Positions 1-59,985 of a stretch of 59,985 nucleotides of DNA are shown in pieces (position 1 is the stretch's first letter; each line of letters opens with the position of its first letter). The notes below the pieces were generated by a model, which searched no databases, was not told the DNA's origin, and was given only the letters and a program-made list of their open reading frames with translations. Source of the stretch: Guillardia theta CCMP2712 (taxonomy: Eukaryota; Protista; Cryptophyta). The stretch covers positions 979,855 through 1,039,839 of the forward strand of contig NW_005434662.1 in NCBI RefSeq assembly GCF_000315625.1, written 5' to 3'. The translations under genes were made by a program, and so were the position numbers.

Positions 1-697
1 GCACTCCTCCTCCCTCCCTCCCCTCCCTCCCCTCCCTCCCTCCCTCCCTCCCTCACTGCCTCGCTGCCTCGCTGCCTCCCTTGCTCTCTGTTGCTCTGTT
101 GCTCCCTCGCTCCTGCCTCCTCTCCTCCTCACCGTCTCTGGGTTGTGGGGGTCCAAAATAGGAACTGCGACGCAGGAGTGGAAAAGTCTCTTAGCAGTGT
201 AATATCTGAAACAGGAAGATCAGAAGAGGACGGGGATTAGGGCAATGACGAAGAGGAAGGAGGAGGAGGAGGAGGTAGTGGAGGAGGAGGTAGTGGTGGA
301 AGAGGAGGAGGTAGAGGAGGAGCAGAAGGAGGAGGAGAAGGTAGAGGAGAAGGAGGAGGAGGAGGAGGAGACATTTCACCTCGAATCATGCTCGATTGAA
401 TCAATTTGAGATTCATTGAAGTCGAACGTGTGAGACCTGCTCATGGGTCAACATCTGCACTAGATTCTGCATGCCTTGACTTTTTCTTCTGCCACACAAA
501 TCCTGGAATCCCGTCCCCGTAACCATACACTCTGCAAAGACAAGACGTGAGAAGCTTCAAAGGGAAGCAAATGCAGGGGCAAGTTGATGCTGATGTTGAT
601 GTTTTGATTTGCTGTTGTTTATGATGATGATAGTGATGATGATGATGATGATGATGATAATGATGATGATGATCACGATGATGATGATGATCACGAC

Positions 698-48247: not shown

Positions 48248-49694
48248 ATGAGTGTCCGACCGCGTGCGGAGACGGCCGTGCGGAGACTTCGATGGAAAAG
48301 CGACTTTGAGAAGAAGTGTCTTGTTTCTAACTTCGAGAGGAGGGGATGGAGAAAGGTAATGGACGACGAGGATGAGTACTGGAATTTGTACTGGGCCAGC
48401 AAAGGAACGCACCTCTCTCCTCTGATGATGAGGTTGGGGGAAGACCAGATGGTGAATCATTATCCCAACCATTATGAGCTCACACGAAAGGATCTGGTTG
48501 TCAAGAACATCAAGAAGTACAGGAAAGAGATGGAGAGGGCGGGGAGGGGGCATGAGGTCGATGACATAGTTCCTGTTACCTTTGTGCTTCCCAACGACTA
48601 TCCTCTGTTTGTTGAAGAGTTCCGGAGGGTGGAGGCCGAACAGGGAAAGTCCACGTGGATCATGAAGCCATGCGCCAAGTGTCAGGGCGTAGGGATCTTC
48701 CTCATCAGCAAGCTGTCTCAGATCAAGAAGTGGGCAGTGAAGAACGGAGAGGCTACCGGGAGAGATCAGTACGTCGTGTCCAGATACATCGACCATCCAC
48801 TGCTGGTCGGTGGAAGGAAGTTTGACCTTCGAATCTACGTGCTCGTCACGAATTACAATCCTTTGCGAGCATACCTGCACTCGCAAGGTTTTGCGAGGTT
48901 CTGTACAGCGAAATATTCGTCATCCCCAACGGACTTAGACAATATCTTGATGCATCTCACGAATGTGGCGGTTCAGAAGCAGGCAGAGGAATACAATGAA
49001 GATCATGGAGGAAAGTGGCATATCAAGAACTTAAGACTGTGGCTGCAGGTCAATCAATCGTGCTGTCAGAGCATGGCAAGATCGGGTTCTCCTCTAGGTA
49101 CTGACAGTGCAACAGGCGATTTATGGACAGGAGCGAACGGAATCTTGTTTCCATCAGATCCGCTCGTTGATATATCACAGCCTCAAGGCTACCCAGAGCA
49201 TCATCATCAATGATAAGCACTGCTTCGAGGTCAGTCAGCCTGCGCTCCTCCCTCTGCTGACTTCGGTTCTCTAGCTGTATGGTTATGACGTCCTCCTTGA
49301 CGCCAATCTCAAGCCATGGCTGATAGAGGTTTGATGGTCACATCGAGCCTCCCGAGGGTAATGGCTCATTAGGTGAATGCGTCTCCTTCACTCTCAGCGA
49401 CTACATCCAACGACTTGACGCTGAAGACTGGTACGGACACGTGTATGCTTATTCTCTCGCTCATCAGTTCTCTCAGGGGTTATCAATGATGTTCTTAACA
49501 TCGTCTTCCCTGATCAGTTTCCTGAAGTGAACAAGAACAATAACAGTACGACTTCTACTACTTCGAAACTCCCTTGGTGACCTGACTTACTGCTAGGAGG
49601 AGACGATTGTTGGCGACAAGGAGGTTTCTTCCCCCTTGTAGATGAGCTCACGGGTGCGCAAGGCTATCAGAGCTTAAGGATGAACTGGCCGTGA
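48248..49694 (+). CDS. TTLL1: Tubulin polyglutamylase TTLL1-like
   Basis: NFERRGW, VNHYPNHYELTRKDL, WIMKPC..QG.GIFL, PLLVGGRKFDLRIYVLV, HLTNVAVQK, HGGKW, HCFE|LYGYDV and PWLIE|VNASPS. Confidence 0.92.
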
Positions 49695-55584: not shown

Positions 55585-57016
55585 TCACGAGGCAGCAGTT
55601 CGTCGACTGCGGATCACCAGGTAGGCGGTAAGAAGCGCTGCCGCAGCGCAGACTCCAACGAGGCTCAGGCTGGTCGCGGAAGGAAATGAAGTCTCGGGTG
55701 CCGGCCTAGCTTGCGGTTCTGTATCCTCAGAGGTTGGAGCAGACTTGCTTTTTGTCTTCTTTCGCTTCTTCTTCTTCTTCTTCGCTTCGGCGGAGGACGG
55801 CACCTGTTCCTCTGTCTCCTTCACCTCCTCCACCTCCTCCGGATTTGCGACTTTCGGAGCAGGCGCCACACTCTTCGCCTGCTCGTTCTTTACACGCCGG
55901 GACTGTTGGCTGCCTTGCCTGCTCCCCCTCTTCAAGTTTGACACCAGCTCGCGCGTGTTGAGCGCCGAGGCCTCTGGCATGCTGGTTGACAGGGCGTTGT
56001 CCGGCAGATCAGCCAGCCAGTCAGGCAACGGGTCGATCACCATCTTGTCTGCGTGCTCAGCGAACCTTTCCTTCCAAAGGAGAGGGACGTTGTACATATC
56101 TCGAAGTTGCAGCAGCATCTGGCGCTGAACTACGGTGTCGTACTCCAAGGTGATGGCTTCGGTGAACAGCTCACGTGCCTCCACGAAGTCCATTCGAGAC
56201 TTCCCAGCGTCACCCTGCACCACAGCTCGCGACTGCAGGGCGAGCGACAGGATGGTCAGCGCCTCGGTGCTTCGCTCGATCTCGAGACAATTTCTCAGCC
56301 GGGTTATCGCCTGCTCCACCAACTGTGTCGAGTTACCCACGTCATACTGTGAGAGCTCAAGCAGGGAACGCGCGTACGACTTGAGCAGGTTCGGGTCCTC
56401 GGGGCTCTTCTTCAGCTTCAGCTCTAGCGCAGCGTGCTGCTCCTGCACCATCTGCACGTACTCCTGCAACTGCTCCTCCTGAGTCTTCCCCTGCATCCGC
56501 TTTGCTGTTTCTTGCACATTCGCTCGCTCCTCGTACGCATTCTCCGGTGTCGCGATGACGCCAATGTGCGGGTATCGCTTTGCCCCCTTGCTGAAGCACA
56601 GCTTGCACTTGGAGAAGTACTGCTCAGCCTGCTTGTCGTCCTCCTCGTACAGGAAGTTGATGTAAAAGACACTGCCAAGCTGAAAGCAACAGTAAGCAAG
56701 CATGCAAGCGCCCGTGCACAGCTAGATCACAGCTCACCTGAAATATTGCATAGTCTCCGTTAGAGGTCATCGCATCCGGGTTGATCTTCATCGCCTTGTT
56801 GAGCTTGTCCCTCGACTCGCGCAGCATCTCCTTCTTCCTCTTTATGTCGCCCTCTGCCATTGCAAGATACGTGAGGGTACAACCCCATTCTACCAGCGCC
56901 GAATCGTTGTCGGGATCCCTCTTGTGTGCAGCCTTGCAGTAATCCACCTTTGACTTGAGAACGTTGATGTATTCCTCCTCTCCCTCCTGCATCCTTGTGC
57001 CCAATTGAGCGTTCAT
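55585..57016 (-). CDS. TOM20: Plant-type Tom20-like TPR receptor with two tandem domains and a C-terminal anchor (intron 56680-56737; 457 aa)
   Basis: Domain 1: DPDNDSALVEWGCTLTYLA..LRESRDKLNKAMKINP..AIFQLG. Domain 2: SPEDPNLLKSYARSLLELSQY..VEQAITRL. Then a poly-Lys stretch and TM LSLVGVCAAAALLTAYLVI followed by RSRR. Confidence 0.72.
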
Positions 57017-58321: not shown

Positions 58322-59985
58322 ATGCAGATCTTCATTCGTAACTTGCATGGCGTTTCGCTCCCCCTCCGAGTCTGTGAGGACGACAGCATCGCGCGGGTGA
58401 AGCAGCAGCTAGAAGAGCGTGAAGAGGTATCGTGGGATGAACAGAGGCTGGTGTACAACGGATACGAACTAGAGGACGAGACCCTACTGAGCGAACTTGA
58501 GCTCGTGCCCGGCTGTACCCTCAGTCTGCACGCGTCGCTCAGAGGAGGTATGCCGAAGAAGAAGGGAGGGAAGAAGGGAGGAAAGAAGGGAGGGAAGGAG
58601 GGGAAGGGAGAGAAGGGAGCGGCGGAGGACGACGGGCTGGAGGGACAAAGCGTGGAGGAGCTGAAGGGTCAGATCCATGACATGAAGGATGGGCTGAGGA
58701 AGGAGATGGAGGAGCGAAACTACTTCCAGCTGGAGCGAGACAAGATCAACACTTTCTGGGAGATTACCAAGAAGGAGCTGGAGGAGAAGAAAGCGGAGCT
58801 GAGGAACAAGGATAGGGAAATGGAGGAGATGGAGGAGAGACATCAGGTGGAGATCAAAGTGTACAAGCAGAAGGTGAAGCACTTGCTGTACGAGCACCAG
58901 AACAGCATCACTCAGCTGAAGACGGACCTGGAGATGGCGACGAAGCTGCTGCAGGACGAGCACAGAAACAGGGAGAAGGAGCTGAAAGACGACAAGAGGA
59001 GCCTGAAGCTCGAGCTGAAGGAGCTCGAGCTTGCGCATGAAGACTTTGTGCGGAACTTGAAGGAGTCGCACGACAAGCAGATCACGCACCTCCGGTCAGA
59101 GTTCGAGCAGCAGGCGAAGGAGCTGCAGGGGAAGTACGAGAAGAAGATGAAGAATCTGCGAGAAGAGCTGGTGATGATGATGATGATGATGGGGAGGAGG
59201 AGGAACTGACAACTTGTTGCAGGAGGGGAGGAGGAAACTAGAGATTCATGAGGTGGAGGAGAGGAAGAATTTTCATATCAACGAGCTGATGAAGAAGCAT
59301 GAGAAAGCATTCGGGTAAGGGATGAAGAAGAGAGTGGAGGGAGAAGAATAATGATGGCTTTTGTTGTCCTCCTTCTCATTTTCGCACCATTCTTCTCTTT
59401 TCCATCCCTTGTCCTTGTCATTATTCGTCTTTGTTGAGAGATGCAGAGTTTGAGCAGGAAGGAGAAGTGAAGAACGATTGTTTCAATCCTGATCGACTTT
59501 TCTCCTCAGCGAGATCAAGAATTATTACAATGACATCACGCACAACAATCTGGATCTTATCAAGTCTCTCAAGGAGGAAGTTGCAGACATGAAGAAGAAG
59601 GAAGCCACAAACGAGAAGCTCATGTGACATGCTGTGTTCACAACCTTTCGTCTGCGATGACTCTGTTGTCCCCCAAGGTTTGAGATCGCACAGGAGAACA
59701 AGAGATTGTCCGAGCCACTCACAAGAGCTCTCAAGGAGGTGAGGGAGATGTGATGTGATGTGATGTGATGTGATGTGATGTGATGTGATGTGATGTGATG
59801 TGATGTGATGTGACGTGATGTGATGTGATGTGCAGTATGCACTCTCGACAGATCTGATGACAACACTTCAGGTTGAGCTTCTTCGTCACGAGTTGTCAAA
59901 CTACGACAAGGACAAACTTTCTCTCCAGGTGAGTCTGATGGCAGAAGACTTATATCCTCCCTCCTCACTTCTCCTTCCTCCCTCC
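58322..59985 (+). CDS. GAS8: Ubiquitin-like domain fused to dynein regulatory complex subunit DRC4/GAS8; continues past the window
   Basis: Residues 1-76 are MQIF...QRLVYNG..LRGG. They are followed by MPKKK.., [42 protein letters not shown] and, in a later exon, [23 protein letters not shown]. Confidence 0.92.
59746..59831. repeat. (GATGT)n intronic pentamer microsatellite
   Basis: Seen directly. Confidence 0.95.

What the first reader, a model, noticed from the sequence alone, without database searches (positions are those of the whole stretch)
55585..57016. Tandem-duplicated plant-type Tom20 outside green plants
Seen: two consecutive helical units of about 110 aa. Each aligns by eye to the plant Tom20 pattern NP.DADNLTRWGG.LLELSQF..I.EAI.K.EEAL.I.P; unit 1 keeps the WG and unit 2 keeps LLELSQ. 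They are followed by a KKKKK linker and a C-terminal tail anchor. Known: plant Tom20 is C-anchored, single-domain and convergent with the N-anchored opisthokont Tom20. Inference: a bivalent presequence receptor. If the host is a cryptophyte, this bears on how old the plant-type receptor is and on Cryptista-Archaeplastida affinity.
Basis: partly seen in the sequence, partly recalled or inferred. Interest (0 to 1): 0.7.

Follow-up and report, generated by a model that had tools for sequence, protein, structure and literature searches.

The report
Double plant-type Tom20 paralogue in cryptophyte
This gene of the cryptophyte alga Guillardia theta encodes a tail-anchored membrane protein carrying two copies of the receptor domain that plant mitochondria use to recognise imported proteins; papers call this receptor green-plant-specific, yet the alga also has an ordinary single-domain copy and a second double-domain copy.

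Summary
The window is Guillardia theta CCMP2712. A two-exon gene on the minus strand (57016-56738, 56679-55585; 58-nt GT-AG intron) encodes the 457-aa protein GUITHDRAFT_134813.

- **Domains:** both halves pass Pfam's cut-off for TOM20_plant (36.3 and 43.4 bits against 20.6), while generic TPR families stay at E > 0.02.
- **Solved structures:** Arabidopsis Tom20-3 (1ZU2) is the best PDB relative of each half by profile, and of the second half by fold (Z 13.5).
- **Rest of the protein:** a disordered, charged linker with a K/R run, then one C-terminal membrane helix and a short basic tail.

The interpretation needs correcting. This is not the alga's only Tom20-like gene.
- A canonical 197-aa single-domain Tom20 (95.9 bits) lies on another scaffold and occurs in seven cryptophyte genera. 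One glaucophyte transcriptome also has it.
- A second double-domain paralogue (GUITHDRAFT_93355) exists. Double-domain proteins also occur in Hanusia and Rhodomonas.
- First units form one clade (100/98), so the duplication predates these genera.

The papers I found say plant-type Tom20 is confined to green plants. A role as a bivalent mitochondrial receptor is plausible but untested. Pfam's model also hits bacterial TPR arrays, so the score alone proves less than it seems. The scan's index showed no earlier find of this on other DNA.

The parts
56738..57016 (-). CDS exon 1 (residues 1-93), starting at the ATG at 57016
   Evidence: ORF list and sequence. The N-terminus is identical to P0001.
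56680..56737 (-). 58-nt phase-0 intron, GTGAGC...TTTCAG, inside unit 1
   Evidence: Sequence. The 457-aa database and MMETSP protein joins exon 1 to exon 2 exactly here.
55585..56679 (-). CDS exon 2 (residues 94-457) plus the TGA stop at 55587-55585
   Evidence: 100% identity and coverage to P0001.
56569..56938 (-). Unit 1: plant-type Tom20 domain, residues 27-130 (spans the intron)
   Evidence: Pfam PF06552 at 36.3 bits, E 6e-9, profile positions 14-111. The unit-1 family profile hits 1ZU2 at E 8.9e-12. hhalign against canonical Tom20 gives E 1.6e-23. pLDDT is about 80-96.
56449..56568 (-). Conserved connector between the units (residues 131-170). It corresponds to the helix after the TPR region ('APELH' region) of canonical Tom20.
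   Evidence: Nearly invariant A141, R145, G157, K158, E162 and E166 across the double-domain proteins. hhalign aligns it to the canonical helix after the TPR region.
56128..56448 (-). Unit 2: plant-type Tom20 domain, residues 171-277
   Evidence: Pfam PF06552 at 43.4 bits, E 4e-11. phmmer to 1ZU2 gives E 1e-4. The profile hits 1ZU2 at E 1.2e-7. Structural match to 1ZU2: Z 13.5, rmsd 3.0 A, 145 of 158 residues, model range 147-301.
55672..56043 (-). Long charged linker (residues 306-429), predicted disordered over 329-429
   Evidence: pLDDT 23-50; composition rich in K, E, A, S and P.
55996..56034 (-). Conserved short motif D-P-L-P-D-W-L-A-D-L-P-D-N (residues 309-321)
   Evidence: Kept in the Hanusia orthologue P0002 and in the metagenomic orthologue P0062. 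Function unknown.
55744..55782 (-). Polybasic run, residues 393-405 (K6-R-K2-T-K-S-K)
   Evidence: Sequence. Kept in P0002 and P0062.
55612..55668 (-). C-terminal transmembrane tail anchor, residues 431-449
   Evidence: Best 19-residue Kyte-Doolittle window 2.34; the next best elsewhere is 0.93. AlphaFold2 helix 430-456.
55588..55611 (-). Short basic C-terminal tail R-S-R-R-T-A-A-S (residues 450-457)
   Evidence: Similar basic tails occur in both G. theta paralogues and their orthologues.

Best explanation
SHOWN: GUITHDRAFT_134813 is a 457-aa tail-anchored protein. Its predicted cytosolic part consists of two diverged plant-type Tom20 (PF06552) domains in tandem. After them come a roughly 125-residue linker, mostly disordered, with a polybasic patch, and one C-terminal membrane helix. 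It belongs to a double-domain paralogue family found so far only in cryptophytes and in unattributed environmental sequences. The family has two sub-types, 134813-like and 93355-like. It coexists with a canonical single-domain plant-type Tom20 in the same genome. The head-to-tail duplication of the receptor domain predates the split of the two sub-types and of Guillardia/Hanusia from Rhodomonas.

INFERRED: like its canonical relative, the protein sits in the mitochondrial outer membrane with both domains in the cytosol. There it would act as an additional preprotein receptor feeding the TOM channel. Two non-identical binding modules on a long flexible tether would give either higher avidity or a second substrate class alongside the canonical Tom20. 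The polybasic patch and the conserved LPDWLA-LP motif are candidate membrane-contact or partner-contact elements.
For: Domain identity:
- Pfam scores both halves above the cut-off and generic TPR families below it.
- Profile-profile comparison to canonical Tom20 gives E 1.6e-23 (unit 1) and 3.7e-19 (unit 2), in register over 134-144 columns.
- Both units match canonical Tom20 better than they match bacterial TPR units: hhalign scores 139 against 92, and 106 against 60.
- 1ZU2 is the top PDB hit for both unit profiles. It is also the top structural match among 48,161 representative chains, for unit 2.

Topology:
- A single C-terminal hydrophobic helix with a basic tail.
- In the sister paralogue P0003, unit 2 plus the anchor aligns colinearly with a whole canonical Tom20, HMM positions 13-186.

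Family:
- Three loci in the genome, and a canonical 197-aa Tom20.
- Double-domain orthologues in Hanusia, Rhodomonas and metagenomes.
- Unit-1 clade supported at 100/98; one origin of unit 2 is not rejected (p-AU 0.43); all cryptophyte sequences group at 86/82.

Expression: the identical 457-aa sequence is listed from MMETSP.
Against: - There are no localisation, binding or complex data for any cryptophyte Tom20-like protein.
- The canonical Tom20 of the same genome could cover the presequence-receptor role, leaving this paralogue free for another job or another membrane.
- The conserved membrane-proximal motif of canonical Tom20 (Y/F-D-x-x-G-W-x-I-L) is absent here.
- A membrane helix of mean hydropathy 2.3 with a +3 tail does not distinguish mitochondrial from peroxisomal or ER targeting. 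This rests on my own knowledge of tail-anchor rules in other organisms.
- Pfam TOM20_plant is not exclusive. Long bacterial TPR arrays hit it 5-6 times, and the canonical domain aligns with them at E 1e-23 to 1e-26.
Confidence: 0.55

Rival explanations
1. Neofunctionalised paralogue on another membrane. The duplicated Tom20-type domains were kept as a protein-binding scaffold. The protein would be anchored in the ER/outermost plastid membrane or in peroxisomes, or would serve a mitochondrial job other than import, such as tethering, quality control or chaperone docking.
For: - A canonical Tom20 already exists in the genome.
- This paralogue has lost the canonical membrane-proximal motif and gained a long linker with its own conserved motif and a polybasic run.
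- Both units are highly diverged: about 20-26% identity to canonical Tom20 and long branches.
Against: - Both units keep full-length, in-register similarity to the receptor domain.
- In the 93355 sub-type, unit 2 plus the anchor is colinear with a complete Tom20.
- Basic residues upstream of the anchor also occur in green-plant Tom20 sequences.
- No alternative targeting signal was seen.
Confidence: 0.3
2. The two units are generic TPR modules that resemble plant Tom20 only because the Pfam model is permissive. On this view the protein is an unrelated tail-anchored TPR protein.
For: - Bacterial TPR arrays score 115-156 bits on PF06552.
- Per-unit scores of those arrays on a canonical-Tom20 HMM (25-64 bits) overlap those of this protein (46-56 bits).
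- Whole-model Foldseek returns only generic TPR superhelices.
Against: - Generic TPR Pfam families do not reach significance on this protein, whereas they do strongly on the bacterial arrays.
- Both unit profiles hit 1ZU2 first, with a wide gap to single-repeat TPR matches.
- Both units are closer to canonical Tom20 than to bacterial units.
- The units share the tail-anchor topology and the helix after the TPR region.
- They group with the cryptophyte canonical Tom20 in the tree.
Confidence: 0.04
3. Gene-model artefact: two neighbouring Tom20 genes, or a mis-join, read as one protein.
For: The only splice evidence I have is a database model plus its listing from a transcriptome. Read-level checks could not be run.
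Against: - Exon 2 alone is one uninterrupted ORF holding the end of unit 1, all of unit 2, the linker and the anchor.
- The same architecture occurs in Hanusia and Rhodomonas transcriptome proteins and in the intron-poor paralogue locus L002.
Confidence: 0.01

Closest known systems
Plant Tom20 (Arabidopsis Tom20-3, PDB 1ZU2; Pfam PF06552 TOM20_plant)
   Same: - The same domain family in both halves.
- The same C-terminal tail-anchor topology.
- Best sequence and structural relative among solved structures.
- Basic residues precede the anchor in both.
   Different: - Two receptor domains instead of one, and 457 aa instead of about 200.
- A linker of about 125 residues, mostly disordered, before the anchor.
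- It lacks the conserved Y/F-D-x-x-G-W membrane-proximal motif.
- Only about 23% identity.
- It occurs in a cryptophyte, not a green plant.
Canonical cryptophyte Tom20 (G. theta G000:C3:1187104-1187697; Hanusia P0193; Baffinella KAJ1491924.1, which NCBI names a 'plant-specific ... TOM20-domain-containing protein')
   Same: - Same genome, same domain and same tail anchor.
- Groups with both units in the tree.
   Different: - Single domain, 197 aa, 95.9 bits on Pfam.
- Aligns end to end with green-algal and glaucophyte Tom20, including the APELH helix and the G-W membrane motif.
- It is the likely true orthologue of plant Tom20; the window's gene is a derived paralogue.
GUITHDRAFT_93355 (P0003) and its Hanusia and Rhodomonas relatives
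   Same: - The same double-domain, tail-anchored architecture.
- Shared unit-1 clade (100/98) and a conserved connector between the units.
   Different: - Shorter linker, no polybasic run and no LPDWLA-LP motif.
- Unit 1 is closer to canonical Tom20 (81 bits against 46 bits on the canonical HMM).
- About 23% identity to the window protein.
Tail-anchored multi-TPR import receptors of other lineages (trypanosome ATOM69, Trichomonas Tom36), with yeast Tom70 as the functional analogue
   Same: A larger outer-membrane receptor with several TPR-like motifs. ATOM69 and Tom36 are also C-terminally anchored (PMC8017667). This is what the protein may work like.
   Different: - No sequence relationship was shown and there is no CS/Hsp20 domain.
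- I saw no obvious carboxylate-clamp pattern by eye in unit 1.
- The analogy is functional only and untested.

Membership tests
Plant-type Tom20 (PF06552 TOM20_plant) | Receptor domain matches the family model above its curated cut-off | tested here: met
   Unit 1 scores 36.3 bits, unit 2 scores 43.4 bits and the whole protein 68.3 bits, against a cut-off of 20.6. Caveat: the model also fires on bacterial TPR arrays.
Plant-type Tom20 (PF06552 TOM20_plant) | Closest solved structure is plant Tom20, by both sequence and fold | tested here: met
   1ZU2 is the top hit for the unit-1 profile (E 8.9e-12) and the unit-2 profile (E 1.2e-7). VIA-align gives Z 13.5, rmsd 3.0 A and 145 of 158 residues for unit 2. 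The fold of unit 1 against 1ZU2 was not reported separately.
Plant-type Tom20 (PF06552 TOM20_plant) | Single C-terminal transmembrane anchor with the receptor domain on the N-terminal (cytosolic) side | tested here: met
   In silico only: hydropathy window 431-449 with an 8-residue tail; AlphaFold2 helix 430-456.
Plant-type Tom20 (PF06552 TOM20_plant) | One receptor domain; total length about 180-210 aa | tested here: not met
   Two domains and 457 aa. Canonical members in the same search are 181-214 aa with one domain.
Plant-type Tom20 (PF06552 TOM20_plant) | Conserved membrane-proximal motif (aromatic-D-x-x-G-W-x-I-L) at the start of the anchor | tested here: not met
   Present in cryptophyte, glaucophyte and green canonical sequences. 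Absent from P0001, P0002 and P0062.
Plant-type Tom20 (PF06552 TOM20_plant) | Mitochondrial outer-membrane location and association with Tom40/TOM | not testable with these tools
   No proteomic or localisation data were found for cryptophytes in the papers searched.
Plant-type Tom20 (PF06552 TOM20_plant) | Binds mitochondrial presequences | not testable with these tools
   Needs recombinant domains and peptides. No complex prediction was attempted.
Generic TPR repeat proteins (Pfam TPR_1, TPR_2, TPR_11 and others) | Significant match to canonical 34-residue TPR models | tested here: not met
   The best is TPR_2 at E 0.024-0.036, 15 bits against a cut-off of 27. Bacterial arrays that also hit PF06552 score 89-142 bits on TPR_11.
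Opisthokont Tom20 (PF02064 MAS20) | N-terminal anchor and MAS20 domain | tested here: not met
   The anchor is C-terminal. No MAS20 match was found anywhere in the genome. The control genomes are prokaryotes and none rang, so genome-wide absence is not shown.

The most novel reading that the evidence does not exclude
Cryptophytes run a multi-receptor TOM built entirely from plant-type Tom20 modules. A canonical Tom20 would serve presequences. Two tail-anchored double-domain paralogues would take over the role that Tom70, ATOM69 or OM64 play elsewhere, handling hydrophobic, internal-signal or chaperone-delivered precursors. On this reading the plant-type receptor is not a green-plant invention. 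It would date at least to the common ancestor of glaucophytes, green plants and cryptophytes, giving a discrete cell-biological character for an Archaeplastida + Cryptista grouping, with loss in at least some red algae.
Probability: 0.2. Interest if true: 0.8.

Novelty: new variant of a known kind. Interest (0 to 1): 0.6.

Why it matters
Reviews and surveys treat presequence receptors as lineage-specific inventions. They state that plant-type Tom20 is present only in green plants (PMC3095331, PMC5455965, PMC6115763). Here a cryptophyte genome carries three members of that family. The canonical form recurs in seven cryptophyte genera and in a glaucophyte transcriptome. That moves the origin of the receptor, or a transfer of it, well outside green plants.

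It also gives a concrete character for the debated link between Cryptista and Archaeplastida, provided red algae and plastid-less Cryptista are surveyed.

The double-domain paralogues are a natural experiment in receptor valency. They are two diverged Tom20 modules on one tether, and I found no paper describing them. They are candidates for the so far unknown second import receptor of a complex alga.

Tried and rejected
- **Spliced model:** I searched it exon by exon by reference. The joined protein was used only as the database entry P0001 returned.
- **Word search with unit 2 alone** (P0001:150-300) found nothing. This is a limit of the method's sensitivity, not evidence of absence.
- **Whole-model Foldseek** on the two-domain single-sequence model gave only generic TPR superhelices with TM 0.2-0.3. 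The exhaustive VIA-align search on the alignment-based model was informative instead.
- **Direct BLASTP of unit 1 against unit 2** gave only a weak, out-of-register match.
- **Tom70 (TIGR00990) in the genome:** 41 generic TPR matches, none near the cut-off. An exon-by-exon search cannot reach that cut-off, so this is inconclusive.
- **MAS20:** no match, but the controls did not ring.
- **Tom22 (PF04281):** one sub-threshold match at 24.1 bits, not followed.
- **ESM Atlas feature search:** scores around 0.9 to mixed TPR and TOM20_plant clusters; uninformative.
I therefore cannot say whether that gene is annotated.
- **Gene neighbourhood:** a tubulin-tyrosine-ligase family gene and a ubiquitin-DRC4 gene; no functional link.
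- **Complex prediction** was not attempted, because I claim no specific protein pair.

Full report
**What is in the window**

The window is scaffold C12 (979855-1039839) of Guillardia theta CCMP2712, a cryptophyte alga. On the minus strand an ATG at 57016 opens a 93-codon exon that ends at 56738. A 58-nt intron follows (56737-56680, GTGAGC...TTTCAG, phase 0). A second exon runs from 56679 to the TGA at 55587-55585.

I searched the two exons separately by reference and did not join them myself. The word search with exon 2 returned the database protein P0001. This is GUITHDRAFT_134813, 457 aa, 100% identical over 100% of exon 2, and its N-terminus is exon 1 as read. The same sequence is listed from NCBI, JGI, UniRef, EukProt and the MMETSP transcriptome source. 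All later work on the 'spliced' protein uses that stored entry.

**Check of the observation**

Pfam gives TOM20_plant (PF06552) as the only significant family.
- The whole protein scores 68.3 bits with two stretches.
- Residues 1-150 alone score 36.3 bits (E 6e-9, residues 27-130, profile 14-111).
- Residues 150-300 alone score 43.4 bits (E 4e-11, profile 7-115).
- The curated cut-off is 20.6.
- The best generic TPR model reaches only about 15 bits, E 0.02-0.04.

The two units are old copies. Direct BLASTP finds only a weak, out-of-register match. Profiles of the two unit families align in register over 128 columns (E 2e-9).

Each unit family aligns better to canonical Tom20 than to the other unit. 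Unit 1 gives E 1.6e-23 over 144 columns, including the helix that follows the TPR region. Unit 2 gives E 3.7e-19 over 134 columns.

Against all PDB sequences, Arabidopsis Tom20-3 (1ZU2) is the top hit of P0001 (E 1e-4), of the unit-1 profile (E 8.9e-12) and of the unit-2 profile (E 1.2e-7). Next come single-repeat matches to designed consensus TPRs.

An AlphaFold2 model built on twelve relatives has pLDDT of about 80-96 in both units, about 25-50 from residue 329 to 429, and a terminal helix 430-456. When the model was aligned to 48,161 representative PDB chains, the best match was 1ZU2: Z 13.5, rmsd 3.0 A, 145 of 158 residues, 23% identity, model residues 147-301. Unit 1 matched three-TPR domains such as Arabidopsis OM64 (Z 11.6).

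The tail anchor is clear. The best 19-residue hydropathy window is 431-449 (2.34), nothing else exceeds 0.93, and eight residues with net charge +3 follow it. The K/R run is residues 393-405.

**What changes the picture**

A six-frame scan of the whole genome with PF06552 finds three loci.

- **Canonical Tom20.** The strongest locus (95.5 bits; 95.9 on the ORF) is an intron-free 197-aa ORF on scaffold C3 (1187104-1187697). It is a textbook plant-type Tom20. It has one domain covering profile positions 15-182, the A-P-E-L-H helix, and a C-terminal anchor that starts with the Y-D-x-x-G-W-x-I-L motif. It aligns end to end with sequences from Netrium (streptophyte), Tetraselmis (chlorophyte) and a Cyanoptyche (glaucophyte) cluster.
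- **Canonical orthologues.** These turned up in Hanusia, Geminigera, Rhodomonas, Proteomonas, Chroomonas and Baffinella. NCBI already names the Baffinella protein a 'plant-specific mitochondrial import receptor subunit TOM20-domain-containing protein'.
- **Second double-domain gene.** The third locus, on scaffold C18, encodes GUITHDRAFT_93355 (P0003, 366 aa). It is also a double-domain, tail-anchored protein.

So the window's gene is not the cryptophyte Tom20. It is one of two derived paralogues.

**The double-domain family**

The exhaustive profile search and the cluster look-ups give two groups.
- 134813-type: Hanusia P0002, metagenomic P0062 with the same polybasic run and basic tail, and P0084/P0189.
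- 93355-type: Hanusia P0152, Rhodomonas salina P0031, and P0005, P0129 and many marine fragments such as P0042.

All share a conserved connector between the units, with nearly invariant A141, R145, G157, K158, E162 and E166. The 134813-type also shares an L-P-D-W-L-A-x-L-P motif.

On a canonical-Tom20 HMM, the second unit plus the anchor of P0003 aligns colinearly with an entire Tom20, positions 13-186. The architecture therefore reads as an extra N-terminal receptor domain placed in front of a complete Tom20.

In a domain tree of 44 units:
- all first units form one clade (100/98);
- the second units fall in two groups, one of them with the cryptophyte canonical Tom20;
- all cryptophyte sequences group together (86/82), apart from a green clade (80/81);
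- the glaucophyte sequence is unresolved.

A single origin of the second units is not rejected (p-AU 0.43). The simplest reading is one head-to-tail duplication of the cytosolic domain in the cryptophyte lineage. It would have happened before Guillardia/Hanusia and Rhodomonas diverged, and a gene duplication into the two sub-types followed. The domain is short and several branches are long, so the deeper nodes are only indicative.

**A caveat on the family model**

The same search returned hundreds of long bacterial TPR proteins. Examples are P0004 with a ParA-like domain and P0008 with a SIR2_2 domain. They hit PF06552 five or six times for 115-156 bits. Their units align with the canonical Tom20 domain at E 1e-23 to 1e-26.

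A PF06552 score is therefore not proof of Tom20 ancestry on its own. The case for this protein rests on the following together:
- generic TPR signal is absent here but strong in the bacterial proteins;
- both units lie closer to canonical Tom20 than to the bacterial units (hhalign scores 139 against 92 and 106 against 60);
- the tail anchor and the helix after the TPR region are shared;
- the units group with the cryptophyte canonical gene in the tree.

**How it probably works**

What is shown is the anatomy: two non-identical Tom20-type modules, a long flexible charged tether with a basic patch, and a tail anchor with a basic end. I infer that the protein sits in the mitochondrial outer membrane with both modules in the cytosol, and that it acts as an additional preprotein receptor beside the canonical Tom20. 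I put this at about 0.55.

The main rival, at about 0.3, is a paralogue that has moved to another membrane or another job. Three points support that rival. A canonical receptor already exists. The membrane-proximal motif of Tom20 is lost. The anchor's hydropathy and charge do not by themselves separate mitochondrial from peroxisomal or ER targeting (this last point is my own knowledge from other organisms).

Whether G. theta has a Tom70 could not be settled. A weak Tom22-like locus exists.

**Comparison with the literature**

- Carrie et al. [quoted passage not shown]
- Fukasawa et al. [quoted passage not shown]
- The Ectocarpus survey found neither type in stramenopiles (PMC3097184).
- A 2024 study reports no TOM20 in the red alga Cyanidioschyzon (PMC11298712).
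- Searches pairing Tom20 with Guillardia, cryptophyte, Cyanophora or glaucophyte found no paper reporting a cryptophyte or glaucophyte plant-type Tom20, or a double-domain form.

The library does not hold most subscription journals, so an earlier mention cannot be excluded. Automatic annotation (Pfam hits on P0001, the Baffinella product name) already carries the domain call.

**Evolutionary reading**

Presence in green plants, a glaucophyte transcriptome (MMETSP data, so contamination should be excluded) and many cryptophytes fits inheritance from a common ancestor of Archaeplastida and Cryptista, with loss in at least one red alga. It fits equally an early transfer into cryptophytes. The tree does not nest cryptophytes inside the sampled green algae, but it lacks the resolution and the taxa to decide. 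Missing are red algae, Goniomonas, Palpitomonas, katablepharids and haptophytes.

**Verdict**

The gene is a new variant (double-domain, long-tethered) of a known receptor family, in a lineage where the papers I found say the family does not occur. The more basic point, a canonical plant-type Tom20 across cryptophytes, lies outside this window. Interest 0.6.

Noticed in passing
L001:1420-2013 (+) = G000:C3:1187104-1187697: Canonical single-domain, tail-anchored plant-type Tom20 of G. theta: 197 aa, PF06552 95.9 bits, intron-free. Orthologues occur in seven cryptophyte genera and in a Cyanoptyche (glaucophyte) transcriptome cluster. The name search returned no NCBI G. theta entry for it, so it may lack a gene model; I could not verify this.
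   Followed up: partly
L002:847-1944 (-) plus upstream exon(s) = G000:C18, about 469167-470400: Second double-domain, tail-anchored Tom20-like paralogue, GUITHDRAFT_93355 (P0003, 366 aa). Its unit 1 is closer to canonical Tom20 (81 bits), and its unit 2 plus anchor is colinear with a whole Tom20.
   Followed up: partly
Proteins P0004, P0006, P0008, P0095, P0132, P0136, P0143 (metagenomic, bacterial-type): Long bacterial TPR arrays, some fused to ParA-like or SIR2_2 domains. They consist of repeated units of about 90-110 aa that hit Pfam TOM20_plant 5-6 times (115-156 bits) and align with the canonical Tom20 domain at hhalign E 1e-23 to 1e-26. They may be bacterial kin of the plant-type Tom20 module. 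They also show that PF06552 is not plant-specific.
   Followed up: partly
window 55996-56034 (-), residues 309-321: Short motif D-P-L-P-D-W-L-A-D-L-P-D-N at the start of the charged linker. It is conserved in the Hanusia orthologue and in a distant metagenomic orthologue (P0062). Function unknown.
   Followed up: no
window 58322-59209 (+): The divergently oriented neighbour starts with a ubiquitin-family domain (62.9 bits). By my reading of the sequence, a coiled-coil that looks like DRC4/GAS8 follows. Another agent of this scan has already followed this up (s1-430508).
   Followed up: partly
window 48248-49213 (+): ORF with a tubulin-tyrosine ligase family domain (PF03133, 219.8 bits). Together with the DRC4 gene, this stretch holds several flagellar or cytoskeletal genes.
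   Followed up: no
L009:6001-6660 (marine metagenome contig, ENA ERZ27235048): A 219-aa canonical Tom20 (P0212/P0207) on compact contigs with eukaryote-type genes and uninterrupted gene calls. In the tree it is sister to the other green-lineage sequences, so it is probably from a picoplanktonic green alga.
   Followed up: no
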